Source of the DNA: Kudoa neothunni
Lineage: Eukaryota > Animalia > Cnidaria
DNA: 64,000 nt
Reading direction: 5' to 3'
Assembly: GCA_964304625.1 (NCBI GenBank)
Contig: OZ199839.1
Coordinates: 8,075,885-8,139,884, forward strand
Below are positions 2,437 through 61,180 of the stretch, in pieces. A program made the position numbers and the translations under genes. Each line of letters opens with the position of its first letter. Positions within the stretch are counted from its first letter, which is position 1. A model generated the notes under the pieces. It had not been told where the DNA came from, made no database searches, and saw nothing but the letters and a program-made list of their open reading frames with translations.

Positions 2437-5293
2437 ATGAAAGACTCTGTTTACGTTTTAAGAATTTGTACTTATCTGACGTGTATATACACACAAACGG
2501 TCCTGGGAGGTGCTTCAAATCCAACTACTACTGAAACCCCTTTAATTTATAAACTTGTGGAAGAGAGCAATCAATTAAACGTTAATTTTATATTAAATGG
2601 AAATTATTATACTGGGGACAAGAAATGTCATATAAAAAAAGCTGATGATGATGGCACGAAACCTTGTTGAAATTGCTACATGCCCCGGTGATGCTTATAC
2701 AACAGATGGTGAAAAATGTGTTTGGACATGTTCAGGAAGTACCAATAAGCTAGCTTTTGACAAGTTCTCCCCAAAGACTAAATATATCGCTATCTTTAGC
2801 GATAATGACGCAGCGACCGCGGCTTCGAAAAATAATAATGGGATTGTATTTGGATTGGAATTTTGTAACTAAAGGATCTGTGTTCAGTAAATTTCCTTTA
2901 GCATTACTGGTGAATCCGCGAGTTTCAATAACAAGGGAGGGGAAAAAACTGAAATTGAGCACAAAAGCTTGTAACTCGGTGAAATGTCCCATATTTTACA
3001 AGGGCGTGATATATGATGAGGGAACAACTCAGAGAAGTGGCATTGCAAATATTGAAAGTGAAATGGAGTTTAATTTGATGATTCCACATTATGCAATGAA
3101 ATGCGATAATTATCCCAGTTTCTTTTACACCCTGCAAAATAAATACACTCTTTTTAACATAGATGTTTATCAACCACAATATTACGTGACCTCTAGTTCG
3201 AGTGCTCCAACGAAGTATATGCTAAAATTTACAAACAAATTTCCCTTCGAAACGTGTCTTTTCAGTATAAGAGAAGTGCCAACAGCAGGTAGTAACGGTG
3301 GATACACATCGAAATGTGGTTCAGCAGATAAATGTTATGCGCCATGTAATAATGTTGAACTTGAATTCACAGCATCCAAGTCTGTTGTTGAAATATCGAT
3401 TAAAACCAGACACGTACCACTGACCATCAATAACATCCCTTATATTGGGTATATTCAAAAAAAATATGGTAATCCAAAAACATTTTAACTATGATAATCT
3501 TCTTATAGTTGTCATCGAAACTACTGCTCCTACCTTATTGTCAGAGCATTCATCTACTGGTGTTAAGTTAAATGTTCCCTTGTTTCAATCACAAGCTGCT
3601 GTTAAATTTTCTGGATGTACTGTAACTTATTATGAAGCAGACAAACCAAAACCTGCTGACCTTGTTCCTGATGGGGCGAAATGTGGAACTGGTAAAACAG
3701 ACTGTGGCAACGAGTGCACGACTGCTCTAGAAATTACAGGATTGGATAGTGGAAAACCATATATTCTTGAAATTGCAGCTGGTAATAACGCTAGCCCTCT
3801 TCAAGATTTTAAAGAACGTGTATTCTTTCGAACAGGTACTATAATCGAAAAAAATATTCTTTTAAATAAATATATAGCAAAGAAATCTGATCCAACCTTT
3901 TCTGAAACAACTCCAACAGTAACGGATACAACCGCGTCTGTTAAAGCAATAGATGTAACTGGTACAATCACAAAAGACGACAAAACTTGTGCTTACTATA
4001 TAAGCCCTCATAGAAAAGATGTATATGTGTGTGCAATGTGCGAAGATAGTTATCCTTGCAGGGGTTTTTGCAAGGATTCTCAAAAAATTATTGGGTTAAT
4101 GCCTGGAACCGAATATGACCTAAAGGTAGTTGCACATGAGGATTATGGAGAAAAAGAACATAAAATCACAACGAGTATATAAATTGATGAATTCTAATTA
4201 TATAACTAATTATGTTTCAAGCTTTGTCAACGCTCACACTAAAATCGGAATTTATAGACAAAGGCTTTAAGGTGATAGGTGTACTTTCAACACCATATCC
4301 TACGGCTGTTTGTCACTATAAAGTAAACGTAAAAAAAGGGAGTGAATCCGAGTTGGTCTACCAATGCCCACCATTGGCTTCTACAGCAAACACTGGAGCA
4401 ACCTCTAAAGTATCCAAGACTACTAAAATAGCACTAGCTAGGACAACTAATGGACACCAACCACAGAACGTGCCGCCTCCAAATAAAAAACCAGAAATCA
4501 CTCCATGCACACAACCTCCATTGTGCACTGATATTATATTCAAAGAAGGATACGAAGCAGACAAGGAATATGTAGTTTTGGTTACTGCTGTCGGCAGATC
4601 TGCAGAAACTACCATCAAAATACCCATAAGTAATAAAAAATCTAATTCTAAATTCATATCGTTTATATTTTAATTACATTTTTAAAATTATATACATTAA
4701 TTTTTTATTATACTAAACTTTAATTTAGGCCCACAGTCCATCCCCACTAATATCCAATCAAATTAACTGTGGTGTTTACAAGAGAAGGCGAAAACCATAA
4801 AAGTTAAAAACTTCTCTTCCTACAGAGCGTTGATGAGCAGTCGTTATGCAAATGGGAATTGAAAAATTGGGATGATCCATCCAAACCAATCGTCCAAAAA
4901 TGCATGGCAACTGGTGAACAAGGTTGTTCAGCTTTTCCATCATGCAAGGAATTTTCAATTTCAAATGTGGATAACACCAACAATTATCGTTTGATGTTAT
5001 ATCATAGTACAGATAGCAACATCTCTGGTTTTGTCGAATCCAGAAAGGTACTTGAAAAAATGTTACTGGTCATTATTTCTGATAATTTGATTAGATGATG
5101 AATCAAACAAATCCATGTAACATCAAGTTGTTAAATTATAATTGATTTATTTTAGGTCAAAAAAATACAATGTACTTATTGATGGAGATATCTTGTTAAT
5201 CAATTATTTTAGAATTATTGCTGTAGTAGTTCCAGTGCTCATCATTGTTGTTGGTGTGGATTCTATTTCGGATACTGGAAAAATAAAAACTAG
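2437..5293 (+). pseudogene. A1: Cys-rich FN3-like multidomain type I membrane protein, frameshifted as given
   Basis: GT-AG introns at 2865-2901, 3469-3508, 3836-3877, 4175-4221, 4630-4728, 5048-5094, 5117-5155 and 5172-5212. Collinear with intact A3. Carries several 1-nt indels and lacks intron 1; some indels may be sequencing error. Confidence 0.8.
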
Positions 5294-6249: not shown

Positions 6250-8480
6250 GGGTTTAACAAAAATCTGGGCTAAATTCCAGTCAGTGTCGCCAACCGTGTC
6301 CGATTTCGGACAAATTAGTCAAAATTGTCCAATTTTTTCCATGTCGTATTTTATCCGATTTTTAGTCTTGTTCTTCGAAAGTCTGAATAATCGCAAAACA
6401 AAGTTTCAAAGATTGGAGTTTTTGCAAATTCCCAAAAAATGGAATCTAATCGTTACTGATTTCATGACGAGAAATCTTCGAGTAGAAAATTTTATACTTG
6501 GAACAATGCTTTATTTCGAATTAAAATGCCTGCAATAGATGTTCACCAAACACAAGACACAGTTAAGAATTTTAATAAGTCTTAAAGCCCATGTAATACA
6601 AAATTGAGCTTAGAAAAACATGCCAAAAATTTATCAAAATGAACACATTTTTAAATTTTATGCTCCCGTTAAGACCAATATTTTGGATTTTTTACCATTA
6701 TCATTATTGACGGCAATACACCGTTTTATCATGACCATGAACCATTTTGGAATTATTACGAAGAGATTTTTGTGCTTGAATTTAAAAGACTCATGATGGT
6801 GATATCTAATTGTAAGTTATCATTACAAGTGTTTGTTATCAATTTTCAAAAAATTCCAATTTTAGGTATTACCTAAAAAAATGAAAATTTAACTAAATTT
6901 TAACTACTTGACTAATTTTTCTTAATTTTAATGAATGAATGGTCGCACATAAAAACGAAACCTCATCTGGGTATAGTTGTTACATGAAATTTAAAAGTTG
7001 GACGATAGACTGTAATAGAATTGTTTGAAATTAGAGGAATTTAATAGGTTAAAACAAGGTTTGTTAGACTAAATTATTAATAATCGCCTTTTTAGCCATT
7101 GTTTATCGGCAAATAAATTTTAATTCTATCGGAAAATACCACACATCTTTATTTCCCCATGCTCTGATCAACGCTTCTCCGGAAGCAGCACTTTCTCTTT
7201 TGGAATTATCGAACACATCAGAAGAAATAGAATGTTGTGCTCTACATTAGATAATCTTGTTCTAATGAGGAATTTTTTCAACACATTGACAAAATGATGC
7301 CATAAATTTGAGGTTTCTGAGTTAATTATAAATTAACGTAATATTTATACATATAATTAAATATTAGTTTCGTTTTTACAAAAAATCTGATTTGTCCGAT
7401 TTGCGTTGGCGGCACTGATTTCAGTGACTGCGACACGCTTCGGAGATATTAGTAACTGGTCGTTATATTTGTGGCGCGGCTAATCTTAACAAGAAAATAT
7501 ATACTTTCGTGAACAGTAACGATATCACTAATTTGGATTATGGTTATTTCCACGATGATTTAGATTATACAATAAAGACATTACAAAGTCTTGGATTGAT
7601 ACCAAGTTTTTCTAAATGTTTGTGTGGCGGTCAAAATTTTTTTGCTAAAAGAAAAGATACTGATGATTGATATCAGTATAAATACATTTTATGCAGAAAA
7701 AGATAGATTCAAAAGGGAACAATTTTTGAAATATCTAGACTTCTGTTGCGGAAGATCTTCATATTTATCGTTTCTATAATTCAGCACTCATCCATGACTT
7801 ATGAGGATATTCGAAAATATGTTAGAATATCATCAAATTCCACCATATGTGAATGGAAAAATGTAATATATGATTTTGTGACCTTTAAATTGGATGAGGA
7901 ATCTCCAAAAATTGGCGGACGGGGAGTTATCTTTCAAATTGATGAGACTGTCATATCTAAAAGAAAATACAACATGGAAAGGATTCTTCGTAATCAACAA
8001 TATTGGATGGTTGGTGGTATCGACGAGAATGGAAATTGTTTTTTACGCTTAACACAACCAAGAAATAAAGACATACCTGTAAGAATTATCCTTGACAACG
8101 TCGAAGAAGAGTCGATCATTTGGACGGACGGTTGGAAAGGATATAATAGCTTGACAATGTTGGGTTCTGTGCATGGGTAATTATTCACGGATGGAAGTTC
8201 GTTTCCTCCGAGGGAACACATTCTAATCCAATTAAACCTACTTGGGGAGCTTTTAAGCGTAAATATCGGAGCGCAACAAATAAAAACCCAGAGACTCTTC
8301 CTCACTATGTGGCCGACTTTAAGTATCGAAGAAAATATTCCGGCAAAGAATTATCATCATTATTTAAATATATAATGATTAACAATAATATATTTTAATT
8401 TTTACGATGTTTCTGAAGTTTGTCTATTTTACCCGAAACGAGCCACAGTCATTGTAATTTAGCCAAAATCTGTGACTTAA
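6250..8480 (+). mobile_element. Merlin (IS1595/ISXO2-like DDE) DNA transposon, decayed
   Basis: ORF 7746-8180 has KIGG.G..FQIDET..SKRKYN, WMVGGIDE and SIIWTDGWKGY. The right TIR at about 8432-8480 matches the left TIR (GGCTAAATTCCAGT|GACTGCGACACGCTTCGG) once the 6282-7417 insert is removed. Confidence 0.85.
6282..7417 (+). mobile_element. non-autonomous hAT element nested in the Merlin left TIR
   Basis: TIRs CAGTGTCGCCAAC / GTTGGCGGCACTG. 8-bp TSD ATTCCAGT/ATTTCAGT. Residual RRNRMLCSTLDNLVLMR near 7220. Confidence 0.8.
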
Positions 8481-12983: not shown

Positions 12984-15887
12984 CTAGTTTTTATTTTTCC
13001 AGTATCCGAAATAGAATCCAACGCCAACAACAATGATGAGCGCAGGAACTACTACAGCAATAATTCTAAAATAATTGATTAACAAAATATCTCCATTAAG
13101 AAGTACATTGTATTTTTCGACCTAAAATAAATTAATAAATAAGAATTCAAAATTTTTATTTTACATGGATTTATTTGATTCATCATCTAATCAAAAATGA
13201 GAAATAGCGACCAACAACATTTTTTTCAACTACCTTTCTGGATTTCGACAAAACCAGTGATATTGTTATCCGTACTATGATACAACATTTAAACGGTAAT
13301 TGTTGGTGTTATCCACATTTGAATTGTAAATTCCTTGCATGATGGAAAAACAGAGCAAACCTTGTTCACCAGTTGTCATGCATTCTTGGACGATTGGTTT
13401 GGATGGATCATCCCAATTTTTCAATTCCCATTTGCATAACGACTGTTCATCAACGCCTGTAGGAAGAGAAGTTTTAACTTTTATGTTTTCGCCTTCTCTT
13501 GCAAACACCACAGTTAATTTGATTGGATTATTAGTGGCGGTAGGTTGTGGATCTAAATTAAAATTTAGTATAATAAGAATTAATTTACATATTTTAATGA
13601 TTTAAAAATTTAATTAATTTAGAATTAGATTTTTTATTACTTATGGATATATTGATGGTAGTTTCTGCAGATCTGCCGACAGCAGTAACCAAAACTACAT
13701 ATTCCTTGTCTGCTTCGTATCCTTCTTTGAATATAATATCAGTGCACAATGGAGGTTGTGTGCATGGAGTTATTTCGGTTTTTTTATTTGAAGATGGCAG
13801 ACCTTGAGGTTGTTGTCTATTAGTTGATCTAGATAATCGCTATTTTAGAAGTTTTTGGTGCATTGGAGGATGGGCCAGTGTTAGTTGTTGATGACGGTGG
13901 TGGGCATTGATAGACCCAATTCGGATTCTTGTCCTTTCTTTACTTTTACTTTATATTGACAAACAGCTGTAGGATATGGTGTTGAAAGTACACCTGCCAC
14001 CTTGAGCCTTTTTCTATAAATTCTGATTGTAGTGTGAGCGTTGACAAAGCTTGAAACATAATTAGTTATATAATTCGAGATCAATTTATTTATATACTTG
14101 TTATAATTCGGTGTATCTTATCCCCATATTCCTCATGAGCAATTACCTTTAGGTCATATTCAGTTCTAGGCATTAACCCAATAATTTTTTGAGAATCCTT
14201 ACAAAAAACCCCTGCAAGGATAACTATCTTCGCATACGGCACACACATATACATCCTTTCCATGAGGGCTTATATAGTAAGCACAGGTCTTGTCTTGTGC
14301 GTTAAGTGGTCCAGTATCTGTTATTGCCTTAATTGATGCATTCGTATCCTTCACAATTGGTTTTGTTTCCGAAAAGGTAGAAGTGCCCTTTTTCTCTATT
14401 TATTCATCAAGAAATTTTTTTTCTATTGTGTTACCTGTACGAAAGAATATGTGTTCTTTAAAAACCTTGAAGAGGACTAGCGTCATTGTCTGCGGCAATT
14501 TCAAGAATATATGGTTTCCCATTATCAAGCCCTGTAATCTCCAGAGAAGCAGTACACACGTTGTCACAGTTTGTTTTACCAGTTCCACATTTGCCCTCCA
14601 GGAGTAGTAGATCTAGGTTTGTCTGCCTCAAAATAAGTTACAGTACAAGTAGAAAATTTAGGCTCATTTGTTGGTTGAAACAACTGAACATTTAATCTAA
14701 CACCAGTAGGTGAGTATGTTGACAATAATGGAGTGGCAATAGTTTCTGTGACAACTATGAGAAGGTTATATTTGAATAAATATCCATTAAATACCAAATT
14801 TTTTCTGAATATATCCTTCATACGTGTCTTCACTTTTGGCCAAAGATACATGTCTAGTTTGAATCAATACTTCAACAACGGACTTGGAATCGTCGAAAAT
14901 GAGCTCAACATTATTACAAGGTGCATGACATTTACTTGCTGAACCACACTTTGACTTGTATTCAACACTGTTATCGGCTGTTGACTTATCTCTTATACTG
15001 AAAAGACACATTTCGAAGGAAATTTGTTTGTAAACTTTAACATATACTTCGTTGTATCACTCGAAATAGAGGTCACGTAATATTGTGGTTGATAAATATC
15101 AATGTTTTAATAGAGTATATTTATTTTGCAGTTTGTAAAAGAAGCTAGGATAATTGTCGCATTTCATTTCATAGTGTGGAATCAATCAAATTAAAATCCA
15201 TTTCACTTACAATATTTTCTGTGCAAGCATTTTTAGCTTCTCCTTCCGCATATTTCACGCCCTTGTAAAATATGGGGCATTTCACCGGATTACATGTTTT
15301 TGTACTAAATTTCAGTTTTTTCACATTTTTCTCGATTGTAACCTGTGGGTTAAACCAATAATGCTAAATGAAATTTACTAAAAATATTCGATGCTTTAAT
15401 TACGCCATTCTAATCCAAACATCCAGCCCCCATCTTTATTTTTATTTGCAGCAGTCGCTGCTGAACTATCCGTAAAGACGGCAACATACTTTGTCCTCGG
15501 AGGAAACTTGTCAAAACCAAGATTATGTTCATTTCCTGAGCATGCCCAAACACATTTGCTATTATTTGCATCGTCAACGCGACCAGAGCAATCGTTAATT
15601 TCAACAAGATCCGTGTCTACATCATTAGATTTTTTGATGTGGCAACTTTTCTCCGTAGAATAGTCGCTCCCAGTTAAAATTAAACTTAACTTTAATTGAT
15701 TGCCCTCTTCCACAAGTTTGTAAATTAAAGGGGTTGCAGTAGAGACTGGGTTTGGAGCACCTCCTGGACAGTTTGCGTGTATATAAGTGAAAAGTAGGCT
15801 ATACGTTATTAGTAGCATTCTGTTGTAGTATGTGTATTTACGCAACAGAAAATTACAAATTCCTAAAAGGTAGATAAAGTCTTTCAT
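12984..15887 (-). pseudogene. A2: family A paralogue, frameshifted as given
   Basis: MKDFIYLLGICNFLL signal exon, same exon layout as A3, and TM exon ending GFYFGYWKNKN*. Multiple 1-nt indels split the ORFs. Confidence 0.8.
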
Positions 15888-24036: not shown

Positions 24037-26045
24037 ATGAAATTAGTTTTTTTGTGCTTTACTCTACTTTATACAGGTAACCTAATTCAATATTGGTTTA
24101 TACATAATTTCGGGCGTAGTCCAACTTCATAGGTATTATATCGTGAGAAATAATGAGCTTCACAAGAATACCATTCATCTGAACTTAGAAGGAAATCCAA
24201 CTCATCTTTGTCGCATCAAATTATTCACCAAAGATGAGACTTCTTATTTTTATCGAGATGTTAATTGTGGGGGTCGAAATATTTGTGAAGTTCCCTGCAG
24301 TGGAGAGTACACTATTCACACCGACCACATAGCTCCTCATCATTTTCTTCAAATAGCCTCAAAGGCTAAAACAGACTACCTCAAAGTTGTTCACAGTATA
24401 TTCATGGTGAGTCATATTTTTAAGTGATACTGTTCTCTAGCCACTTCATCTGCTCCTTTCTCCTCATACCACTTTGATGATTCAAGTGTGATCTTTATCA
24501 CCAAGCATCTGTGCGAAGAGTCGCCTTTCGTTTGTCAGATTAGATCTGGACAGTTTACCGTTAAGAGTTACACTATTGATTCACAGCCTCGATGTGGTGA
24601 TGAATACTTGCTGAGCAGTTATTACAATATTTACAATAAACCGCTTGAACTATACTGCGGACCTCACAATCCAAAACTTTTCTTTGATAAAAATATGTTA
24701 CTAAATAACAAAGCAAACCTACTGAAAAGATTTCCTGTGAGAATCAAAAATAATACTGCCGCAAACAAAATGAACATCATATTCGATGAACCCATTCCCG
24801 ACACAATTTGTAAATTCGAAATCGCTAAAAAGACTGGTACTTTAGAATCTAAATGCGAAGTCACTAATGATGGTGCCTGTTACCAAATGTGCCAAAATGT
24901 TACAATGGAGACAAATTATATTACTACCGATAAAAATTTTAATGTTAAAATAACCACCAGGGATGGAATAACCGAATCATTGTTGATGTCAAGTAATTTA
25001 GTAATATTTAAACCTCTTTTATATTTTTATTAGACGAAAAAAATGATATTGAAATAAAGGATATAGGCAAGTATAAAGCTACTTTAGGGGTCGCCGCACT
25101 TCATGAGAATAGTGCTCAATGCAAGGTTGAACTATATTTACAAGCTAACTACGTAAAAATAGACTCAAAATCTGTAGGATTACAAGGGTATACAAATTTT
25201 GTAACATGTAATGCTGATATAACTATATTAAATCTTATGGCTGATACAAAATATGTTGTCAGCGTACAATATAAATCTTCTAGTAGTGAGGCTGCAGTGC
25301 ACATTAATAAAATTTTTAAAACAGGTAAATGAATTTATTTTATAGCAATTAACAATATTTATAAAAGCTAAAATTGGTGACGTTACCGCTGAAATCACAA
25401 CATACCCTCGAAATGTTGTTATTATTCCACAACAAATAGAACATGAAAATTATCAAGCAGAGTGCGTAATAATGCAAGCATTAAATGGCAACCAGGATTT
25501 TGTTCGATCAGTGTGTGAAGAATCACACAACTGCTTGGGGTTGTGCACCTCAACATTTACCATCACCAGGTTGAAACCGGATACCGAATATAAATTTAAA
25601 GCTGTTCCATTGAGTTTCTATGTGGAGACCGACGCTCTAACGAAAAGCGTTCGAACAGGTATTCATTGTTTGTAAATTTAAAATTGACAAACTTTTAGAG
25701 TCTTTATTCAAGAAGGTGGAGCTTGAATATAAATGGACGGAAAATGATTTGGAGATAACAGTAAAGGTGCAAGGTAGGAATGATGGAATTTGCGACTTTA
25801 CCTTTGTGGAAAAAACTGAAGGAAAGGAAACAAAACTACTTGCTGTACACGACCAAACAAACGGCTGGAATGAACCATGCAACTCCAAAATCACCTTTTT
25901 TGATGTTCCTGAGTACAAATCAGCCACAGTGATAGTCCAACGCAGATATGACGGTGAGCCAGTTGAGTTGGAACTCTTTATCACAGACCCAGAAGCTGTG
26001 ACTGCATCGACAACTGAAACAACTGCTACTCCTACAAGCACCTAA
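24037..26045 (+). CDS. B1: secreted Cys-rich FN3-like six-module protein with Thr-rich tail, about 598 aa
   Basis: Five phase-1 GT-AG introns (24077-24119, 24396-24440, 24993-25033, 25325-25367, 25659-25698) give an open 1797-nt CDS. Hydrophobic N-terminus, FN3-like motifs LMADTKY and LKPDTEY, and C-terminus TTETTATPTST*. Confidence 0.88.
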
Positions 26046-27866: not shown

Positions 27867-30128
27867 ATGTTGGTCATTGCATTGTTAATCATTTCTCTCT
27901 GCTACAATGGTGAAATAAGCTGGAAGTGGGATTATCTATAATAGATATATTTAGCCCACTCACACAAATACTACGTCCAACGAGATCAAACCGAATTAGA
28001 GGATACAATCCATTTAAAACTTGAAGGAGTTTCTGGAAGTAAATGCAACGTTCAATTGTTGGAAAGAAACGAATTTTTCTATCACTATATTGGGAGTGAA
28101 TCTGAAGGAAAACAACTTAAGGATGTCTCTTGTGTCGGGAAATACACTATTCCAACTGGAGCTGCTTTTCCATTCTATTATGTACAGATAAGATCCGAAT
28201 ATGCAACTGAAACTCTTAAAATAATCCATAGTAATTCTATTTTTTGAATATTTTTTCCTAATTTTCTTATAGTCACTGACAGTATTCCTCAAACTCAATT
28301 TAAAGTAAATGAAACTTCAATCGAATTCACCACTAAAAATGTCTGCAGTCATCCTCAAACTTGTAAACTAACAAGTGGTGACAAGGTCCTGGATGAGTTT
28401 ACTCCAACCTCTGAAACCGAGTGCAACACTGAAACCAAGCTCACCGGGTTTTTTGATTCAGTCGGTGATTCAGTCGAACTCTCTTGTGGTGTCAATCAGC
28501 CAAAAATACACATGTATAGAAAAAATAACAAGGCTATGGAATTCAGTCCTTTGGACAAACTTCCCTATCACATTGTTAAAGGAGATGCGGATAATAAGAT
28601 AAAAATCGTTTTCGATGAAGATATGAGAGACGAAATATGCAAATTTGAAATAAAAAAAGATGATACTAGTGCTGCTTATACATCAAAGTGCTCGGTTACT
28701 GGAGATGACACCAATTGTTATCAACTTTGCACTGACGTTGAAATGGAGTTAACATTTGCTGGCACAGAAAAAGATTTTAAAGTTAAAGTATCGACTAGAA
28801 ATCATACAGGAGCAGAGAAAATTTTAAGAAGTAAAATCCTTGTTTAAATAATTTTATTTAAATGTCAATTAGTTGACAAAAGTAACCTAGAAGTTACTCC
28901 GAAAGAAACTAATGCAACTCTTTCTATCGCGGCCCTTAAAGATACAGATTTGACCTCTGCATCTTGTTCCATTGAGTTGAGAAAGCAGGGATTTCCTAAA
29001 TTCAACATTGGCGTGAAATGCAATGCCGATTCAACTACAGCATGTCCAACAAATTGTGATGATGCTACCATTCTTGGTCTAGAACCGAATACAAAATATA
29101 TCGTCAAAGTGACTTATACTGGCACTGGTGAAAGTTCAAAAACATATAATGCAGAAAAGTTATTTAAAACAGGTAATAAATAAAAATTAATTTATCTAAA
29201 ATTTAATTAAGCTGACTACAATATAACGCAATTGCCTGAGATTAAAGCATATTACGAGCACGTAAAAATGACTGTAGCACCGAACGTGGCTCTGTTTGAC
29301 AGAGTATACTGTAAAATTCAACAAAAAATGGTGGGCGAAACTGCTTTCAGCCCATCTGAATGCGAAGAATCGGTTGATTGTTCAGGTTTATGTGGACAAC
29401 CACTCACTATTAAAAACCTTTTTCACGATACTGAATACGAATTTAAATATTTATTTGGAAAGTACGTTAGTGACCTTGATAAAAACAAGGTGACAGTATC
29501 GACAAGTAATGTACAATATTAATCTCTCAATAACATTTATTAAGTTGCAACGCTTCAAAAAATCAATGTTACCCACACATGGAATAACACCGATTTGATA
29601 GTCACAACGACAATGGAGCAGATGGACCCAGACCAAATTTGTGATTTTACATTTGCCCAAATAGTAGATGGAGTTGTCAAATATACTTACGGATTATATG
29701 ATAAAACTACTGGATGGGAGGGGAAATGCAACCAAGAAATAACCTTTTACAACACTGCTTCCTACAGAAGGGGCTCAATGAAAGTACAGGCCAGATACGT
29801 TAGTGAGCCGATCGTTGTGAGCCTTTGGGCTGGAGGAAATGAGGATAATTTTGATCCAAACTTTCCAGAAACTGGTAAACAAGGTAAATAATATTATATA
29901 AACATTAATTATAATCCATTTTAGGCACTTCGAATAGGTAAGATAGTTTATGTTAGAGTATTTAATTAACTACTAACTTTAATTTAGCGCTAATGTTGGT
30001 GGAACCAAAATTCTGTAATATTATCTGTTCCTATACAATTCTAATGATGATTTAGGTTGATTGTTGGTGGCGTTTTAATAGCATTGATGGTTTTTGCTAT
30101 TGTTTTCTTGGTTTTGACAAAGAAATAA
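27867..30128 (+). CDS. B2: Cys-rich FN3-like six-module membrane-anchored protein, about 640 aa
   Basis: Eight GT-AG introns (27910-27954, 28231-28272, 28831-28872, 29173-29211, 29506-29544, 29884-29924, 29938-29987, 30015-30055) give an open 1923-nt CDS. Signal MLVIALLIISLCYNA and C-terminal LLIVGGVLIALMVFAIVFLVLTKK*. Confidence 0.9.
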
Positions 30129-34120: not shown

Positions 34121-37029
34121 CTAGTTTTTATTTTTCCAGTATCCGAAATAGAATCCAACGCCAACAACAATGATGAGCGCAGGAACTACTACAGCAATAA
34201 TTCTAAAATAGTCGATTAACAAAATATCTCCATCAATAAGTACATAGTATTTTTTGACCTAAAATAAATCAATTATAATTTAACAACTTGATGTTACATG
34301 GATTTGTTTGATTCATCATCTAATCAAAATATCAGAACTAATGAACACTAATATTTAATCAATTACCTTTCTGGATCTCGACAAAACCAGAGATATTGTT
34401 ATTGGTACTATGATACAACATCAAACGGTAATTGTTGGCATTATCCACATTGGAAATTGAAAATTCCTTGCACGATGGAAAAACAGAACAACCTTGTTCA
34501 CCAGTTGCCATGCATTTTTGGACGATTGGTTTGGATGGATCATCCCAATTTTTCAATTCCCATTTGCATAATGACTGTTCATCAACGCCTGTAGGAAGAG
34601 AAGTTTTAACATTTATGCTTTCGCCTTCTCTTGTAAACACCACAGTTAATTTGATTGGATTTTTAGTGGGGTTAAATTGTGGATCTAAATTAAAATTTAG
34701 TATTACTAGAATTAATGTACATATTTTTAATAATTTTAAAAATTTAATTAATTTAGAATTAGATTTTTTATTACTTAAGGGTACTTGGATGGTAGTTTCT
34801 GCAGATCTGCCGACAGCAGTAACCAAAACTTCATATTCCTTGTCTGCTACGTATCCTTCTTTGAATATAATATCAGTGCACAATGGAGGTTGTGTGCATG
34901 GAGTGATTTCTGGTTTTTTATTTGGAGGCGGCACGTTCTGTGGTTGGTGTCCATTAGTTGTCCTAGCTAGTGCTATTTTAGTAGTCTTGGATACTTTAGA
35001 GGTTGCTCCAGTGTTTGCTGTAGAAGCCAATGGTGGGCATTGGTAGACCAATTCGGATTCTTGCCCTTTCTTTACTTTTACTTTATATTGACAAACAGCT
35101 GTAGGATGTGGTGTTGAAAGTACACCTGTCACTTTGAAGCCCTTTTCTATAAATTCCGATTGTAGTGTGAGCGTTGACAAAGCTTGAAACATAATTAGTT
35201 ATATAATTAGAATTCAACTATTTATATACTCGTTGTAATTTTATGTTTTTTTTCTCCATAATCCTCATGTGCAACTATCTTTAGGTCATATTCGGTTCCA
35301 GGCATTAATCCTATAATTTTTTGTGACTCCTTGCAAAAACCCCTGCAAGGATAACTATCTTCGCACATGGCACACACATATACATCTTTTCCATGAGGGC
35401 TTATATAGTAAGCACAAGTCTTGTCAGTGGATGCAATTTCTTCATTCCCATCTATTGCCTTAACAGACGCGGCTGTATCCTTCACAGTTGGGGTTGTTGC
35501 AGAAAAGTTAGATTCAGATTTTTTATCTAAATATTTATTTAAAGAATATTCGTTTTCTTTTATATTACCTGTACGAAATAATATAATTTCTTTAAAACCT
35601 TGAAGAAGACCATTGGTATTCTTTGCTGCAATTTCAAGAATATATGGTTTTCCACTATCCAGACTTGTAATTTTTAGAGCAGTAGTGCACTCCGTTCCAC
35701 AGCTTGGACTGGCGTCTTCACATTCCGCCGTTACATCGGAAGCAGGTTTAGGTTTGTCTGCTTCATAATAGGTTACAGTACATGTAGAAAATTTGGGATC
35801 ATTTGTTGGTTGAAACAACGGAACATTTAATGTAACACCAGTAGGTGTGTGTTCAGACAATAAGGTAGAAGTTTCAGTTTCCGTGATAACTATGAGAAGA
35901 TTACCAAAGTTAAAATGTTTATGGAATACCAAATTTTTTCTGAATATATCCTTCATATGTAGTGCCACTTTTAGTTAACGATACGTGCCTGGTTTGAATC
36001 AATATTTCTACAACCGACTTGGAATCTTCGAATACAAGCTCAACATTATTACAAGGTGCAAAACATTTTTTGTTGTCCGAACCACAATTTGATTTGTAGT
36101 CTTCGGTATTTCCGGCTGCAAGTTCTGTTGACGGATCTCTTACACTGAATAGACACATTTCGAAGGGAAATTTGTTCGTAAACTTTAGCATATACTTCGT
36201 TGTAGCACTCGAACTAGGGGTCACATAATATTGTGGCTGATAAACATCAAATTTTGTAAGAGTGTATTTATTTTGAAGTTTATAGAAGAAACTGGGGTAA
36301 TTATCGCATTTCATTTCGTAATGTGGAATCATCAAATTAAAATCCACTTCACTTTGGCTATTTCCAGTGCAACTACCTCCAGCCGTTCCTCCATCATATT
36401 GCACGTCCTTGTAATACATGGGACATTTCACTGGTTTACAAGTTTTGGTGCTAAATTTCAGTTTTTGACCACTTTTCGCAATTGTAACTTGCGGATTGAT
36501 CAGTAATGCTAAAAGAAAATTACTGAAGATATTTGATGCTTTATATACGCAACTCTAATCCAAATACAGCCCCATCATTATTTTTTGTTGCAGCGTTCGT
36601 TGCGACAGTATCCGTAAAAACGGCAATATACTTAGTCTTCGGGGAAAAATTTCCAAGAGCGATTTTATTAGTATTTACCGAGCATGCCCAAACACATTGG
36701 TTAGTATCTGTTCCTTCAACACGACTAGGGCAATCACCAATTTCAACAAGATCCGTGTCTACATCATTAGATTTTTTGATATGACAATTTTTCCCCCCAT
36801 CATAATCTGCTCCACTTAATATCAAATTAAGTTTTAAGTCATGTGCCTCTACCACAAGTTTATAAATTAAAGAGTTTTCGGTAGCGGCTTGAATTGAACC
36901 ATCCCTCTGATCTCCATCGGTGTATATAAACGAAAAATAGGCTATAAATAATTTGTAATTTTTGTTGTAATTATTGTATATACTTGACAGAAAAGTACAA
37001 ATTCCTAAAAAGTAGACGAAGTGATTCAT
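34121..37029 (-). CDS. A3: intact Cys-rich FN3-like seven-module type I membrane protein, about 826 aa
   Basis: Ten exons with GT-AG introns (e.g. 36942-36983, 35527-35568, 34685-34774) join without frameshift. Signal-like N-terminus. FN3-like motifs FSPKTKY, LDSGKPY and LMPGTEY. TM IIAVVVPALIIVVGVGFYFGYW followed by KNKN*. Confidence 0.9.
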
Positions 37030-46253: not shown

Positions 46254-48518
46254 TTATTTCTTTGTCAAAACCAAGAAAACAATAGCGAAAACCATCAGTG
46301 CTATTAAAACGCCGCCAACAATCAACCTAAATCATCATTAGAGCTGTATGGGAACAGATAATATTACAGAATTTTGGTTCCACCAACATTAGCGCTAAAT
46401 TAAAGTTAATAGTTAATTGAATACTCTAACATAAAACTATCTTACCTATTCGGAGTGCCTAAAAAGGATTATTATTAATAGTTATTTAATAAAATTTACC
46501 TTGTTTACCAGTTTCTGGAAAGTTTGGATCAAAATTATCCTCATTTCCTCCAGCCCAAAGGCTCACAACGATCGGCTCACTAACGTATCTGGCCTGTACT
46601 TTCATTGATCCCCTTCTGTAGGAAGCAGCGTTGTAAAAGGTTATTTCTTGGTTGCATTTTCCCTCCCATCCAGTGGTTTTATCATATAATCCGTAAGTGT
46701 ATTTGACAACTCCATCTACTATTTGGGCAAATGTGTAATCACAAATCTGGCCTGGGTCCATCTGTTCCATTGTCGTTGTGACTATCAAATCGGTGTTATT
46801 CCACGTGTGGGTAACATTGATTTTTTGAAGCGTTGCAACTTAATAAATGTTATCGAGAAATTAATATTGTACATTACTTGTCGATACTGTCACCTTGTTT
46901 TTATCAAGGTCACTAACGTACTTTCCAAATAAATATTTAAATTCGTATTCAGTATCGTGAAAAAGGTTTTTAATAGTGAGTGGTTGTCCACATAAACCTG
47001 AACAATCAACCGATTCTTCGCATTCAGATGGGCTGAAAGCAGTTTCGCCCACCATTTTTTGTTGAATTTTACAGTATACTCTGTCAAACGGAGTCACGTT
47101 TGGTGCTACAGTCAATTTTACGTGTTCATAAAATGCTTTTATTACAGGTACTTGCGTTATATTGTAGTCAGCTTAATTAAATTTTAGATCAATTACTCAT
47201 TATTTATTACCTGTTTTAAATAGCTTTTCTGCAATATACGTTTTCGTACTGTCACCGTTTTTTGTGTAAGTCACTTTAACGATATATTTTGTATTTGGCT
47301 CGAGATCAAGGATGGTGGCATCTGAGCAATCGGTTGGACATGCTGTAGTTGAATCAGCATTGCATTTCACGCCAATGTTGAATTTAGGGAATTCTTGCTT
47401 TCTCAACTCAATAGAACAAACTGCGGTGTCCAAATCTGCATCTTTAAGGGCCGCGATAGAAAGAGTTGCATTGGTTTCTTTTGGTTCTACACTTAGGTCA
47501 CCTTTGTCAACTAATTGACATTTAAATAAAATTATTTAAACAAGGATTTTACTTCGTAGAGTTTTCTCTGCTCCTGCATGATTTCTAGTGGTTACTTTAA
47601 CTTTAAAATCTTTCTTTGAAGTATCACTAGTGTCCAAATCCATTACGACGTCAGTGCAGAGTTGATAACATTTATCGTCATCCGAGGGAGCAGAGCATTT
47701 TGAAGTATAAGTACTTTCATCTTTTTCTTTAATTTCAAATCGGCATATTTCATCTTGTATATCTTCATCGAAAACAATTTTTATTTTATTAGTTTGACCA
47801 CTGACTTTTTCGATGTGATAGGGAAGTTTGTCCAATGGACTGAATTCCATGGCCATATTATTTTTTCTATACATGTGTATTTTTGGCTGATTGACTCCAC
47901 AAGAGAGTTCTACTGAATCATCGATTGAATCAAAAAATCCGGTGAGCTTGGTTTCAGCGTCGCATTCGGTGTCAGCGGTCGGAGTGAACTGATCCAGGAC
48001 TCTATCTCCACTTGTTAGTTTACAAGTTTGAGGATGACTGCAGACATTTTTAGTGGTGAATTCGATTGAGGTTTCGTTTACTTTAAATTGAGTTTGAGGG
48101 ATAGTGTCAGTGACTACAAGAAAATTAGGGGAAAATTTCTAAAAATTGAATTACTATGGATTATTTTAAGAGTTTCAGTTGCATATTCGGATCTTATCTG
48201 TACATAATAGAATGGAAAAGCAGCTCCAGTTGGAATAGTGTATTTCCCGACACAAGAGACATCCTTAAGTTGTTTTCCTTCAGATTCACTCCCAATATAG
48301 TGATAGAAAAATTCGTTTCTTTCCAACAATTGAACGTTGCATTTACTTCCAGAAACTCCTTCAAGTTTTAAATGGATTGTATCCTCTAATTCGGTTTGAT
48401 CTCGTTGGACGTAGTATTTGTGTGAGTGGGCTAAATATATCTATTATAGATAATCCCACTTCTTGCTTATTTCACCATTGTAGCAGAGAGAAATGATTAA
48501 CAATGCAATGACCAACAT
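46254..48518 (-). CDS. B3: inverted near-duplicate of B2, intact
   Basis: Same nine exons as B2. Exon 2 appears identical, the C-terminal exons are nearly identical, and modules 2-4 are diverged. Confidence 0.9.
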
Positions 48519-49153
48519 TTTTGGTTCTTAATTATAACAGCGTTATTAATTTTAATAATAATTATACAAATGAATAACTCTAGATGACAATTGGTACGAA
48601 ACTGTGTAATTGAAGCACGAACTATAAGACTGAATAACATTTCAACAATGCAATTGAGAGCCGATAAATCGCATTAAAACCGAAACTAAAAACTTTTCTA
48701 CTTTACTAATAATGTCACAAAAAAATAATCATATTAAAGTACAAATGCTTCACTTAGATAAAAAAATTTTTTTTAAATTTATGATCGATTATTCTTCCAT
48801 TAGCCTATTAAGAAATCAATGTATACTTAATAATCCTTTAAATATTATAGAACTACAAATTAAGATAATTATTTCTATTGTCATAGCTTGAACATAATAA
48901 TATTAATTTCTTTTTCATAAAAATATTCAGTTTAATAAAAAATCAATCTATACTGCTTACAAATAATACTTTCTATTAATATTCAGACAAAAATTAATTA
49001 AAATTTTTTTTAATTAGTGTAAAAATAATATTACATTGAAAAACAGAGACAGTACTATAAATACGAAAGATAAATTAAAAAAACGTGTCAACTATTTAGT
49101 TGATTGTCAAAGAGAAAGATATTTGAAAACTAATTAAGTTTGCAGAAGTATTT

Positions 49154-49481
49154 CTAAGTGCTTGTAATGGTAGCAATTGTTTCGGTTATCACTACTGTGG
49201 CAAAGAGTTCCAGCTCAACTGGCTCACCGTCAGATCTGCGTTGAACAATCACTGTGGTTGATCTGTACTCAGAAACATCAAAACGGGTGATTTTAGAGTT
49301 TCATGGCTCATTCCAGCTGTTTGTTAGGCCGTGTACTGCAAATAGTTTTGTTTCCTTTCCTTCGGTTTTTTCCACAAAGGTAAAATCGCAAATTCCATCT
49401 CTTCTTCCCATATCTTTACTGTTATTTCCAAATAATTGTCCGTCCATTTATATTCAAGTTCCACCTTCTTAAATTGAGACT
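49154..49481 (-). pseudogene. B4: last-exon remnant of a B1 paralogue
   Basis: Reverse complement encodes GICDFTFVEKTEGKETKL and RSDGEPVELELF, ending TST* as in B1. The acceptor AG reads AA, there is a frameshift, and the upstream exons are missing. Confidence 0.85.
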
Positions 49482-51991
49482 TTAAAACAGTATTTCCCTA
49501 CAAATTTTACATCCCTATCCCCATCTTAATTTCCACGTTCACTTTGTATCCCCTCCTCCATGTGAATGTTAAGACTCAATTATACTTTTTATTTAAATGC
49601 GAAAATAATAATACCAATGAAAAATGTCTTAGAATTAAAATTTTTATTATTTTAGTTTATATTTAACTTCTAATTTCCCCTTCACGTCTAAAATAAATTA
49701 AAACCAAAATGTTTTGGTTAACTCAATTTGCTATGTATAATTGAAAAAGGATGACGTTATCTTTTCGCTCCTCATGATTTAACACCCAATGATTGGAGCT
49801 TTTATTCATTCCTGCTTATATATACTATTTTTATGTAAAGTAATAAATAATGTTATTAAAATTATTGCAGAATATTAGACTTAAAAAATAAATATAAACG
49901 TAATAATAAACTATGAAAGGTATGGTCCCATAATTAAATTCTATACATAAAAGTGAAAAATGAAATGAGTCAAATAAAAATAGCCAATTCGTATAGTTCA
50001 CAAGATACATTATTTCAAATAAATTCTTATTCAGTATTTATTTTATCTAGCGGTTCTCTAACTCCCGCTAGGTTTTCATAAGTAATTCAAAGCAGGACAT
50101 TTTGTAGGAATATGAAACATGAAAATCGTTGCCGGGGTTTAATGAATTCCGATACTTATTATTTGTATATAATGAAGTCGATAAACTTGCTTCATATACT
50201 ATCTTCTACAGAAAAACCTAGCAAATTCCTTTTTCTATATTGAATCATATTTTAATTTAAATTTTGGGGCAGTGGGTTAAGAAAAATTCCGAAAATTCAA
50301 AAAATAAGCCTTCTAAATATACTCGAGTAAAATAACTAATATATTGTTAAAATTGGTTTTCGTTTATTTATGTATATAAATGAATGCTTTGATCCTTGTT
50401 TTACCTATACTTTCAAGAACAATTTAACTTATATTTATATCAGAAGCAAGGTAAAAATTTGAAAGTAAAACTTAAAATGTAACATAATAAAAACAATGTA
50501 ATTAAATGATAGATCTCAAATTTAGACAGGAGACAAAGTTAAAACTACATCGTGGTTTTATTTTTATGGATATAGATTATTCCTAAGTAGATAAAAATGC
50601 TGACAACCTAAGTACAGCTAAAGCGCATAAATATGTTATTTTGAAAGATAACAAAGTAACTATTTTACATGAAAATAGCGATAGTTAGATTTTATACGCT
50701 GAACAGGCCTAATATAAACTATTACCTTACTGCGCTATTTCGTAGAACCAAACAGAATGAATTATAAATTAAATAAATTATCAAATCCCATATTTGAACC
50801 GATACTGATTGATATCAAAACAACCAAAAATATTACTATACGCATTACGCCCTTACATGATTTAATCGGGGACTAACGAACAATACTAATTGAATAAACT
50901 AAGATTAATTTTTAAATTTATTCTTGAATAACTCCCACACCCCTAACGATGGCTTTTCGTATCCCCTGTAAGGAACGCACTGGTCTAGAACTAAAGATCA
51001 TGGTATAACTTTCTTATACCAAAGCAATTATTACAATTACAAACGTATCATTCAGTTATTGTATTTTCCATGTACAATAATTTATTAAATAATTCATAAG
51101 TTTCTAATGTATTACAAATATAGGAAATATTATGGTCATAGTAATATCACTATATCTCGCACCATTAAAAAATAAACTACTAAGAAGATTAGATAAACTA
51201 AAGTTAGTTGGTTTTGACATTTCTAATCAACAAAACTTTTAATATTTAGAATTCAGTCCGGGAAAAAGTTAATTTAAATTCAAACAAATTATCTAAATCT
51301 ATTATTACTGACTACTGAGTTAGATATGGGTTTTACACACAAATGCTATAACGAAACTAGATAGGAGATAATAATCATCCCAAAGTTGTTTATATATGTG
51401 AAAACTTAGGGAAATACAGCATAACAAAGAGGACGCGCAAGTTGTGCGCGCGCCACGATAACGGCCGAAGCTATATTTTGCTTGATTTTTTTAAACTGAT
51501 ATTTTTAAACTTATATTTGTGATCAATCCATTTTAAAAAATGTAAACAGACGATTTATTATAAAATCAGAAGGGGGCGCGCACAAAAGACGGATTTTTAG
51601 AGGTGGATATTCCTGCATTACCGTTCGCACTAGTTAACGTTATTTGTTGAATTTTTTTATGTTGGAAAGCACCGAAAAATTATTAATTACGCTATATCGA
51701 AATCTTACTTTAATTTTTTAATGCTTTGCGATATAATGTAGTTCTCATTTTCATTATGAGCCATCATAATGAATTCTTCATTACCCAAAATCATATTAAG
51801 GAGGATGGAGATTTTCAGCTAAAATAATTGAGGATTTTAGGTTATCTATTTTTCCCATTGGACATTCTTTTATAATATGACGTTATATCTATTCTATCTT
51901 TCAAAGAACAAAAATTCTTGATTCTCTCCAAATGTTCACGACCCATCATTTGGACAATATTATTCTTAAGCTTAATGCTTACGACCCTTCA

Positions 51992-56572: not shown

Positions 56573-56578
56573 TTAAGG

Positions 56579-58259: not shown

Positions 58260-61180
58260 CTAGTTTTTATTTTTCCAATATCCGAAATAGAATCCCACAC
58301 CAACAACAATGATGAGAACTGGAACCACTACAGCAATAATTCTAAAATAATTGATTAACAAGATATCTCTATCAATAAGTACATTGTATTTTTCGACCTA
58401 AAATAAATTAATAAATAAGAACTCAACAATTTTATTTTACATGGATTTGTTTGATTCGTCATCTAATCAAAATATCAGAAATAATGACCAATAATATTTA
58501 ATCAATTACCTTTCTGGATCTCGACAAAACCAGAGATATTGTTATTGGTACTATGATACAACATCAAACGGTAATTGTTGGTATTATCCACATTTGAAAT
58601 TGAAAATTCCTTGCATGATGAAAAGCTGAACAACCTTGTTCACCAGTTGTCATGCATTTTTGGACGATTGGTTTGGTTGGATCATCCCAATTTTTCAATT
58701 CCCATTTGCATAACGACTGCTCATCAACGCCTGTAGGAAGAGAAGTTTTAACTTTTATGTTTTCGCCTTCTCTTGTAAACACCACAATTAATTTGATTGG
58801 ATTATTAGTGGCGGTAGGTTGTGGATCTAAATTAAAATTTAGTATAACTGGAATTAAATGAACATATTTTTAATAATTTTAAAAATTTAATTAAAATATA
58901 AAAGATATGAATTTAGAATTAGATGTTTTATTACTTATGGGTACTTTGATGGTAGTTTCTGCAGATCTACCGACGGCGGTAACTAAAACTTCATATTCCT
59001 TGTCTGCTTCGTATCCTTCACTGAATATAAAATCAGTGCATAATGGCGGTTGTGCGCATGGAGTGATCTCGGTTTTTTTATTTGAAGGTGGCAGACCTTG
59101 TGGTTGATGTCCATTAGTTGGCCCTAGATATCGCTATTTTAGAAGGTTTAGATGCTGCAGAGGGTGTCCCAATCTTTGTTGTAGAAGCCAATGGTGGGCA
59201 TTGGTAGACCAACTCGTATTCATTCCCTTTTTTTACGTTTACTTTATAGTGACAAACAGCTGTAGAATATGGTGTTGACAGTACACCTATCACCTTAAAG
59301 CCTTTGTCTTTAAATTCCGATTTTAGTGTGAGCGTTGAAAATGCTTAAAAGAAAATTAATTATATAATTCGAGGTCAATTATTTATTTACTCGTTGTAAT
59401 TTTGTGTTTTTTTTCTCCATAATCCTCATGTGCAACTACCTTATAGATCATATTCAGTTCCGGGCATTAACCCAATAATTTTTTGAGAATCCTTGCAAAA
59501 ACCCCTGCAAGGATAACTATCTTCGCACATGGCCACACACATATACATCCTTTCCATGAGGGCTTATATAGTAAGCACAAGTCTTGTCTTGTTGCGTTGA
59601 GTGTTTCGCTATTATCTATTGCTCTAATTGATGCAATTGTATCCGTTACTGTTGGATTTGTTTCAGAAAAGGTGGATTCAGGGTTTTTAGCTATATATTT
59701 ATTTTATAATTATTTCTTTTTATTATATTACCTGTTCGAAAGAATATATGTTCTTTGAAGTCTTTAAGAACACCATTGGTGTTGGTTGCTGCAATTTCAA
59801 GAATATATGGTTTTCCATTAGAAAGCTCTGTAATCGTTGTTAGCAGTGCATCCTTCTCCGCATCCTCCACTGGTTCTCCCACATTTCACATCTTCAGGAG
59901 AAGTTGGTTTAGGTTTATCTGCTTCGTAATACTTTACCGTACATCCATCAAATTTATGATCCTTCTCTGGCTTGAACAACAGAACATTTAATGTAACACC
60001 AGTAGGTGTGTCGTGTTGACAATAAGGTAGAATCAGCAGGTTCCGTGATAACTATAAGAAGGTTACAAATAAGTAAATATCCATGAAATACCAAATTTTT
60101 TCTGAATATACCCAGGATACGCAGCGCTATTGATGGTCATTTGGTACGTGTCTAGTTTGAATCAATATTTCAACAACAGACTTGGATGCTGTGAATTCAA
60201 GTTCAACATTATTACATGGCGCATAACATATATTTGTTGAACCACACTTGGATGAGTAGACATTGTTAGCGCCAGTCGTTGGTACTTCTCTTATACTGAA
60301 AAGACACATTTCAAATGGAAATTTGTTTGTAAACTTTAGCATATATTTTGTTGTAGCACTCGAAGTTGAGGTCACGTAATATTGTGGTTGATAAATATCA
60401 ATGTTTAGTAGAGTAAATTTATTTTGCAGTTTGTAAAAGAAACTAGGATATTTATCACATTCATTTCATACTGTGGAATCATCAAATTAAACTCCAATTC
60501 ACTTTCAATATTTTCGGTGCAACTTCCCCTATCTGTTCCCTCCTGGTATTTTACATCCTTGTAAAATATGGGACAGTTTACCGATTTACAAATTTTAGTG
60601 CTCAATTTCAGTTTTTGACCACTTTTTGCTATTGTAACTTGCGGATTGACCAATAATGCTAATAAAAATTTACTGAAAATATTAGATGCTTTATTTACGC
60701 AACTCTAATCCAAATACAGCTCCACCATTATTTTTATTTGAAGCGTTTGTTGCGTCATCATTTGTAAAGACAGCAATATACTTTGTGCTCGGAGAAAAAT
60801 TGTCAAGACCTAGTTTATTGGTGCTTTTTGAGCATGTCCAAACACACTTGCCACTAGCTCCGCCTCCTTCACTATCAGGACATGTAGTAATTTCAACAAG
60901 GTTTGTTTCATCGTCATTTGATATTTTGATATGACACTTTTTGATCCCCGAGATAGTCATTTCCATTTAATAATAAATTAACATTCAATCGGGTCGAATC
61001 TTTCACAAGTTTGTATGTTAAAGAGTTCTCAGTAGTAACTGGATTTTGAGTATCTCCCTGACCTCCTTGGGTGTATATAAGCAAATAAGGGGCTATAAGT
61101 TATTATTAATATGTCTTTGGAAATTGGATATATACATGACAATGAAGAACAAATTCCCAAAGGTAGACAAAAGCTTTCAT
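58260..61180 (-). pseudogene. A4: family A paralogue, frameshifted as given
   Basis: Full-length and collinear with A3 from MKAFVYLWEF to GFYFGYWKNKN*. Many 1-nt indels. Confidence 0.8.

What the first reader, a model, noticed from the sequence alone, without database searches (positions are those of the whole stretch)
2437..61180. Candidate variant surface antigen locus: eight clustered genes of a Cys-rich FN3-like protein superfamily
Seen: four A genes and four B genes or fragments built from roughly 95-aa modules, each with a C..C-x(3-7)-C-x3-C insert and an FN3-like L-x-P-x-T-x-Y end. They have a signal peptide and either a TM with a 2-5 residue tail or no anchor. A and B are homologous: A KFPFETCLFSIRE..YTSKC..CYAPCNNVELEF aligns with B DEICKFEIKK..YTSKC..CYQLCTDVEMEL, and A CEDSYPCRGFC..GLMPGTEY aligns with B CEESHNCLGLC..RLKPDTEY. 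Established: tail-less, Cys-stabilised, loop-variable paralogue arrays in TE-rich regions typify parasite surface antigen families, and taeniid EG95/45W are FN3-type antigens. Inference: this is an uncharacterised host-interacting or immune-evasion family; I do not recognise it as a named gene.
Basis: partly seen in the sequence, partly recalled or inferred. Interest (0 to 1): 0.9.

Follow-up and report, generated by a model that had tools for sequence, protein, structure and literature searches.

The report
Huge Kudoa variable surface protein family
A tuna-muscle parasite related to jellyfish (Kudoa neothunni) carries at least 275 copies of an undescribed gene family for surface and secreted proteins, and in the copies compared here they differ most in one small disulfide-pinned loop region, as expected of a variable coat facing the host, though no expression or function has been shown.

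Summary
The genes are real. The genome matches the myxozoan Kudoa neothunni (PMC12239612), so the tapeworm EG95 comparison is only an analogy. The window holds four intact genes (A3 826 aa, B1 598 aa, B2 640 aa, B3), three full-length A copies whose 1-nt frameshifts look like assembly errors, and one B1 remnant. They are a small part of a genome-wide family: at least about 275 loci (hand count), against 5,316 annotated genes. AlphaFold models of five modules give FN3-type sandwiches. Module-level dN/dS is 0.11-0.56, so selection is purifying. Near-identical duplicates on three chromosomes differ mainly in module 3, and all 18 B2 copies compared have a different Cys-pinned double loop in a fixed frame. 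All 14 unanchored B1-type genes or remnants sit directly upstream of an anchored B2 gene. One outside homologue was found, an exon in an ENA metagenome. No named family fits and the papers searched do not describe it. Best reading: a variant host-facing surface repertoire (0.6). Expression, localisation and switching are untested. First readers in this scan already flagged the same family on other windows of this genome.

The parts
2437..5293 (+). Gene A1: full-length A-type copy, 8 one-base indels in the assembly (2659, five at 4749-5038, 5257 and one more), no substitution stops; intron 1 is deleted in frame
12984..15887 (-). Gene A2: full-length A-type copy with 15 one-base indels; probably consensus errors at least in part
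   Evidence: record 12 matches 14393-14613 with 0 substitutions but 3 gaps
24037..26045 (+). Gene B1: 6 exons, 598 aa, signal-peptide-like exon, six modules, Thr-rich end, no TM exon (predicted secreted)
   Evidence: paralogue 3' ends
27867..30128 (+). Gene B2: 9 exons, 640 aa, signal-peptide-like exon, six modules, 13- and 27-nt micro-exons, TM, tail TKK
28620..28745 (+). B2 module 3 hypervariable double loop inside the fixed DEICKFEI..SKC..CYQLC frame (approximate bounds)
34121..37029 (-). Gene A3: intact, 10 exons, 826 aa, seven modules, two micro-exons, TM, tail WKNKN
   Evidence: fold of modules 4-5
46254..48518 (-). Gene B3: intact B2-type gene, same nine exons; module 1 identical to B2, module 3 about 20% different
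48822..49511 (-). 3' remnant of a B1-type gene (last module and downstream DNA) directly upstream of B3
58260..61180 (-). Gene A4: full-length A-type copy with 12 one-base indels and no substitution stops

Best explanation
A Kudoa multigene family (at least about 275, probably 300 or more loci) of type I surface and secreted proteins that forms a variable repertoire facing the host. SHOWN: each gene is a signal-peptide-like exon followed by six or seven FN3-type modules in phase-1 exons, then micro-exons, a TM and a 3-5 residue tail with no room for a signalling motif (or no anchor, in B1). The scaffold is under purifying selection. In B genes, copies of one clade are nearly identical in modules 1, 5 and 6 but differ by 15-25% at synonymous and non-synonymous sites alike in module 3 (and often 4), where two loops pinned by conserved Cys differ in all 18 B2 copies compared. 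In A genes the distal modules vary and the proximal ones are near-constant. INFERRED: gene conversion homogenises the scaffold while selection keeps module 3 different between copies; the Cys form disulfides that present these loops; the repertoire lets the parasite show different epitopes or bind varied host molecules, probably a subset at a time; B1 is a soluble partner co-expressed with, and possibly bound to, the B2 downstream of it.
For: Gene models with open frames and conserved splice sites. 150 matches at E<=7e-41 for one exon, the scoring cap, nearly all in an open frame; 152 and 140 for other exons. AlphaFold pLDDT 79 for modules 1-3, all-beta with about seven strands each; best matches are FN3 and cytokine-receptor domains; module 4 Z 9.6, rmsd 2.6 over 88 residues to an FN3. 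dN/dS 0.11-0.56. Module 3 has the highest pN in nine of ten pairs and is exceeded only by module 4 in the tenth. Differences cluster beyond all 500 shuffles in eight comparisons, with identical tracts up to 838 nt beside blocks 20-27% different. Loop pN/pS 0.77 (B2) and 1.23 (B1) against 0.06-0.62 in most other segments. B1-B2 linkage 14 of 14 in an exhaustive search. Antigenic variation is reported in myxozoans with the mechanism unknown (bioRxiv 10.64898/2026.02.11.705288).
Against: No transcript or protein evidence: two host-labelled RNA runs gave no reads (not a test) and the assembly paper says few RNA reads mapped. No segment shows dN/dS clearly above 1; synonymous sites are partly saturated and loops are only 8 codons. 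The same homogenised-except-one-domain pattern occurs in protocadherin clusters, which serve cell recognition (PMC1852091). Kudoa lives long inside host cells, which shelters it from antibody. Some tandem near-duplicates could be uncollapsed alleles of a diploid sequenced at about 7x. The detailed analysis covers B genes; most of the family (A-type) was counted, not analysed.
Confidence: 0.6

Rival explanations
1. A parasite self/kin recognition or adhesion code: module 3 sets homophilic or B1/B2 pairing specificity between the parasite's own cells (cell-in-cell development, sporogony, mating), as EC2-EC3 do in clustered protocadherins and Alr proteins do in Hydractinia.
For: Same pattern of homogenised proximal domains and one protected variable domain as protocadherins. 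Cnidarians have a clustered Ig/FN3-like allorecognition family (PMC9546547).
Against: Tails of 3-5 residues cannot carry the ITAM/ITIM-type motifs of Alr. About 300 genes is a lot for an animal with a few cell types (inference). Alr FN3-like domains lack the EF-loop Leu and strand-F Tyr that modules 4-5 keep.
Confidence: 0.15
2. A library of decoy or capture receptors for host molecules (cytokines, immune receptors, matrix), diversified for ligand range rather than antibody escape; B1 and B2 form a two-chain, cytokine-receptor-like binding site.
For: Top structural rows include a poxvirus interferon-gamma-binding protein complex (Z 8.5) and cytokine receptor chains (Z 7-8.2). Soluble plus anchored pairing is fixed.
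Against: Those Z-scores are tied with many unrelated FN3 and Ig-like folds and show no function (note). No WSxWS motif in A3, B1 or B2. A decoy for a fixed ligand should conserve its binding loops, yet module 3 loops differ in every copy.
Confidence: 0.15
3. A mostly passive expansion of a structural coat or spore protein, spread by transposon-driven duplication, with variable loops merely tolerant of change.
For: Genome is 45.6% repeats; transposon fragments lie between the genes; remnants exist; no loop has dN/dS clearly above 1.
Against: Relaxed constraint does not explain raised synonymous divergence confined to module 3 in otherwise identical duplicates on three chromosomes. Purifying selection holds in every module, and most copies keep an open exon 3.
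Confidence: 0.1

Closest known systems
Taeniid EG95/EM95/45W oncosphere antigens
   Same: Parasite multigene family of FN3-type extracellular proteins (PMC4836691).
   Different: Cestode, five relatives in E. multilocularis, GPI-anchored; one or two FN3 domains (own knowledge). Here a cnidarian, 6-7 modules, Cys-pinned inserts, TM anchor, about 300 genes; no EG95-like protein was recognised among the search results.
Giardia VSPs and the VSP-like genes of Sphaerospora molnari
   Same: Signal peptide, Cys-containing ectodomain, single TM, very short basic tail, multigene family.
   Different: VSPs have more than 10% Cys and more than 5 CXC/CXXC motifs. These have 3.4-3.8% Cys, 0-1 such motifs and FN3 folds. 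S. molnari has 18 such genes.
Hydractinia allorecognition (Alr) family
   Same: Cnidarian, clustered, highly divergent single-pass proteins, one domain per exon, FN3-like domain with disulfides, some secreted forms (PMC9546547).
   Different: [quoted passage not shown] Here all folded modules are FN3-like, modules 4-5 keep the L..Y signature, tails are 3-5 aa and genes are on all three chromosomes.
Clustered protocadherins (as an evolutionary pattern)
   Same: Regional gene conversion homogenises most ectodomains while one or two stay diverse (PMC1852091).
   Different: Cadherin fold, shared signalling tail, neuronal role; no homology.
Fibronectin type III superfamily, including cytokine receptor ectodomains
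   Same: Seven-stranded sandwich; EF-loop Leu and strand-F Tyr in modules 4-5; weak Pfam fn3 hits.
   Different: Below Pfam's cut-off (23.8 against 25 bits). The C'-strand region is Cys-pinned and variable; none of the 150 best public FN3 proteins has the four-Cys pattern.

Membership tests
FN3 superfamily | Seven-stranded FN3-type beta-sandwich | tested here: met
   Predicted models of modules 1-5; module 4 Z 9.6, rmsd 2.6, 88 aligned; modules 1-3 Z 7.2-8.5. Modules 6-7 were not folded.
FN3 superfamily | Pfam PF00041 at gathering score | tested here: not met
   Best 23.8 bits against 25; 12 of 47 module sequences match at E<=0.01.
FN3 superfamily | EF-loop Leu and strand-F Tyr | tested here: met
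   Near-invariant in modules 4 and 5 only; absent from B modules 1-3 and 6.
Taeniid EG95/45W | Cestode origin, small GPI-anchored FN3 antigen | tested here: not met
   Genome is myxozoan; 6-7 modules with TM or no anchor.
Giardia/S. molnari VSP | More than 10% Cys and more than 5 CXC/CXXC motifs | tested here: not met
   3.4-3.8% Cys, 0-1 motifs (definition).
Giardia/S. molnari VSP | Signal peptide, single TM, short tail | tested here: met
   Hydrophobic first exon and TM exon with 3-5 aa tail in A and B2; by hydropathy and inspection, not SignalP.
Hydractinia Alr | V-set/I-set Ig domains and ITAM/ITIM-bearing tails | tested here: not met
   FN3-type matches dominate and tails are 3-5 aa.
Hydractinia Alr | Direct sequence or structure homology to Alr domains | not testable with these tools
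   No Alr sequence could be fetched by name.
Class I cytokine receptors | WSxWS motif and signalling tail | tested here: not met
   No WSxWS in A3, B1, B2; tails 3-5 aa.
Variant surface antigen systems (as a kind) | Large paralogue repertoire with localised hypervariability and segmental exchange | tested here: met
   size; variation.
Variant surface antigen systems (as a kind) | Diversifying selection (dN/dS above 1) at exposed loops | tested here: inconclusive
   Loop pN/pS 0.77 and 1.23 on 8 codons, synonymous sites partly saturated.
Variant surface antigen systems (as a kind) | Surface exposure, exclusive or switching expression, recognition by host antibody | not testable with these tools
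   No parasite RNA available.

The most novel reading that the evidence does not exclude
Kudoa runs a true antigenic-variation or combinatorial recognition system on an FN3 scaffold: about 300 genes whose disulfide-pinned, CDR-like module-3 loops are shuffled by segmental conversion and expressed a few at a time, with B1 and B2 forming a soluble-plus-anchored two-chain receptor. It would be the first such system defined at gene level in Kudoa and one of the largest in any animal parasite relative to gene count.
Probability: 0.3. Interest if true: 0.9.

Novelty: new variant of a known kind. Interest (0 to 1): 0.74.

Why it matters
Myxozoans are known for losing genes, yet this one keeps a family equal to about 5% of its annotated gene count, which the genome paper does not mention and homology-based annotation could easily miss. 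Antigenic variation has been seen in myxozoans without a known molecular basis. This family gives a concrete candidate, with a defined variable region and constant regions, for a genus that spoils farmed and wild fish flesh. It makes the question directly testable by single-parasite RNA-seq and serology, and the constant modules are obvious diagnostic or vaccine candidates.

Tried and rejected
Single-exon and B-profile searches of 5.8 billion proteins: nothing. The HMMER scan of 1.84 billion representatives was swamped by long multi-FN3 proteins; best single-domain score 22 bits, none with the four-Cys pattern, so a true relative with few modules could sit below the listed 150. ESM Atlas by features and by structure: only weak Ig-like or FN3 leads. 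JGI metagenomes: no relative. Literature: no description found. Rejected: EG95 and VSP membership; a single fused B1-B2 gene (B2 has its own conserved ATG and signal exon, and I saw no conserved phase-1 donor at the end of B1); old pseudogenes for A1, A2, A4 (0, 1 and 0 substitution stops in about 775 codons each, the one beside an indel). A GPI-like tail for B1 in another frame was tested and is unresolved. Left out: the joined spliced proteins were not searched or folded; all searches were by exon or natural open frame, and two folded frames include a 14-codon intron. The broken copies were described, not mended.
Full report
Organism. The window is C2:8075885-8139884 of a 40,260,978-base assembly in four contigs. 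The three large contigs are 17.15, 12.04 and 11.05 Mb; the fourth is 18,219 bases with divergent cox1-like frames. These figures match the curated Kudoa neothunni assembly of PMC12239612: 40.2 Mb, N50 12.0 Mb, three chromosomes, circular mitochondrion, GC 30.4%, 5,316 predicted proteins, 45.6% repeats, k-mer coverage about 7, QV 48.5. The identification rests on that match, not on a sequence comparison. K. neothunni is a myxozoan (parasitic cnidarian) of yellowfin tuna. The paper never mentions fibronectin, surface, secreted or immune genes.

Gene models. B2 (27867-30128, +) has nine exons and 640 codons in one frame; B1 (24037-26045, +) six exons and 598; A3 (37029-34121, -) ten exons and 826. 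B3 (48518-46254, -) keeps all nine B2 exons with their splice sites. Every intron between modules is phase 1 and 39-47 nt, except one of 90 nt; phase-1 modules are typical of Ig and FN3 exons (own knowledge). Each gene starts with a 13-15 codon hydrophobic exon conserved in paralogues. A and B2 end in two micro-exons and a TM exon with a tail of three to five residues; these splice sites are invariant across 12 B2 copies and the TM exon is shared by 7 A-type copies. B1 stops after a Thr-rich stretch.

What the modules are. AlphaFold of a B2-type frame with modules 1-3 gave mean pLDDT 79 and three all-beta domains of about seven strands. Foldseek and VIA matches are FN3 arrays and cytokine receptor ectodomains, Z 7.2-8.5 and tied among themselves. 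A3 modules 4-5 (pLDDT 68) match FN3 domains, Z 9.6 for module 4 and 7.9 for module 5. Sequence agrees weakly: Pfam fn3 at E 5e-5, below the cut-off, and PDB profile hits to titin and fibronectin through the E-F strand signature. A and B are homologous at modules 3, 4 and 5 (97, 90, 95%), modules 4 and 5 partly to each other (77%), the rest not detectably. Modules 6-7 were not folded, and disulfides were not read from the models; they are inferred from invariant Cys pairs in an extracellular protein.

The broken copies. A1, A2 and A4 are full length but carry 8, 15 and 12 one-base indels against A3. Across about 775 aligned codons each, with about 300 differing, they show 0, 1 and 0 stop codons made by substitution, the one lying beside an indel; 4.9% of random point changes would make a stop. 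A contig from the same sample matches A2 at 14393-14613 with no substituted letter but three gaps, where the assembly has frameshifts. Both point to consensus errors at low coverage, at least in part; a near-identical intact twin elsewhere is not excluded.

Family size. One B2 exon gave 140 matches, A3 exons 4-5 gave 152, the listed ones at E<=9e-27, and an A-type exon 3 gave 150 at E<=7e-41, with 466 candidates and nearly all in an open frame. Each search stops at 150 scored candidates. Merging the coordinate lists by hand gives about 275 distinct loci on all three chromosomes, mostly in clusters; the overlap between lists suggests 300 or more. That is about 5% of the annotated gene count. 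A-types are the bulk; B2 has 20 copies and B1 14, remnants included. Of the first 234 loci counted, 65 lie within 1 Mb of a chromosome end (28% against 15% of the DNA), but clustered copies are not independent and this window is interstitial.

Outside the genome. A profile of A-type exons found one protein, P0151, E 2e-49, on a 610-base contig of ENA assembly ERZ795007. It is genomic, has the same exon borders and is 74% identical to its best match in this genome, so it probably comes from another Kudoa; the sample's identity is unknown to me. Nothing else was found. Length limits and the scarcity of myxozoan proteins in the databases make these blanks weak.

Selection and mosaicism. dN/dS per module is 0.11-0.56 in B1 and B2, so these are working genes. 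Divergence is uneven. L013 and L016, 15 kb apart on C3, differ by 0-3 bases per 100 over most of a 5-kb B1+B2 cassette but by 21-27 in B2 module 3 and 10-18 in B1 module 3. L014 and L015 on C1, and window B2 against B3 or L004 on C2, show the same, with identical tracts of 315-838 nt; no shuffle of 500 reached the observed clustering in any of eight comparisons. Module 3 has the highest pN in nine of ten pairs, module 4 in the tenth, and synonymous differences rise with it (pS 0.27-0.43 against 0-0.12 in modules 1, 5 and 6 for the first three clean B2 pairs and B3). That fits old variants kept or exchanged as blocks, not fast point mutation. Module 3 trees have long tips where module 5 and 6 trees have almost none, while the main clades persist. 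All 18 B2 copies have a different pair of loops in a fixed Cys frame, and B1 of L007 shares one loop with L006 and the other with the window copy. pN/pS in the inter-Cys loop is 0.77 (B2) and 1.23 (B1): raised, but not proof of positive selection. A genes show a distal-to-proximal gradient, pN 0.17-0.26 in modules 1-4 and 0.04-0.10 in modules 5-6. Some tandem pairs may be uncollapsed alleles; the variation would then be allelic, still centred on module 3.

The B1-B2 pair. A search in which all 40 candidates were scored found 14 B1-type last modules. Each lies directly upstream of a B2 gene on the same strand, on all three chromosomes; six B2 genes stand alone. Pairs persist across clades about 35% apart in protein. 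Co-duplication explains the linkage; its persistence suggests co-expression or a complex, which is inference.

Mechanism. Shown: an extracellular FN3 stalk under purifying selection, an anchor with no signalling tail, hundreds of copies, and variation confined to Cys-pinned loops by escape from homogenisation. Inferred: the loops are the exposed, selected surface; the repertoire faces the host and is used a subset at a time (0.6). Rivals are a self-recognition code (0.15; protocadherin clusters show the same conversion pattern, and Hydractinia Alr is a cnidarian precedent), a decoy-receptor library (0.15) and passive expansion (0.1). No RNA test was possible: two host-labelled RNA runs gave no reads, which says nothing unless the parasite is in them.

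Comparison and verdict. It works like a variant surface antigen family but is not a member of EG95/45W, VSP, Alr or the cytokine receptors; each fails a defining feature tested here. Candidate variant surface genes have been proposed for another myxozoan, S. molnari (18 VSP-like, 27 RIFIN/STEVOR-like), with the mechanism unknown; I found no description of this family. First readers in this scan noted other clusters of it in the same genome; those notes are not independent support. Verdict: real, undescribed, a new variant of a known kind; interest 0.74, held down by the lack of expression and function data.

Noticed in passing
window 25998-26038 and 26039-26088: In B1 a 41-nt GT..AG stretch inside the Thr-rich end is kept in eight copies. 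Splicing it out would open a gap-free hydrophobic frame of about 16 codons that resembles a GPI signal. It is 46% GC, unlike local introns, is absent from L014/L015, and the codon test did not single out that frame.
   Followed up: partly
window 2437-2500: A1 lacks intron 1 and a few codons of exon 2, apparently by an in-frame deletion between two short direct repeats.
   Followed up: no
window 34685-34774: A-type intron 6 is 90 nt, twice the usual length, with an internal donor-like site at 34720; possibly a nested intron or a hidden micro-exon. It is about half as long in L020 copies.
   Followed up: partly
window 48822-49511, L009:3332-3493, L010:3420-3796: A similar 3' remnant of B1 precedes three B2-type genes, suggesting one truncation that was then duplicated.
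   Followed up: partly
L021:2900-5800: A divergent, apparently low-copy member with modules 4-5 in one open frame and a different, longer C-terminal region; a candidate for the family's conserved ancestor-like gene.
   Followed up: no
L002:1970-3470 (C2 about 5,426,750): The 18S rRNA copy is cut at model position about 1158 and continues into AT-rich DNA that seems to encode zinc-finger-like motifs; possibly an rDNA-targeting retroelement or a rearrangement.
   Followed up: no
window 7400-8400, 16700-18450, 20870-22360, 38670-39940, 41300-43300: Fragmented DNA transposons: IS1595/Merlin-like, two piggyBac (DDE_Tnp_1_7) and pogo-type (DDE_1); 1-817 is a 90% inverted copy of 42286-43110.
   Followed up: partly
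L024:1-610: ENA metagenome assembly ERZ795007 holds a genomic exon of this family, so that sample probably contains Kudoa DNA.
   Followed up: partly
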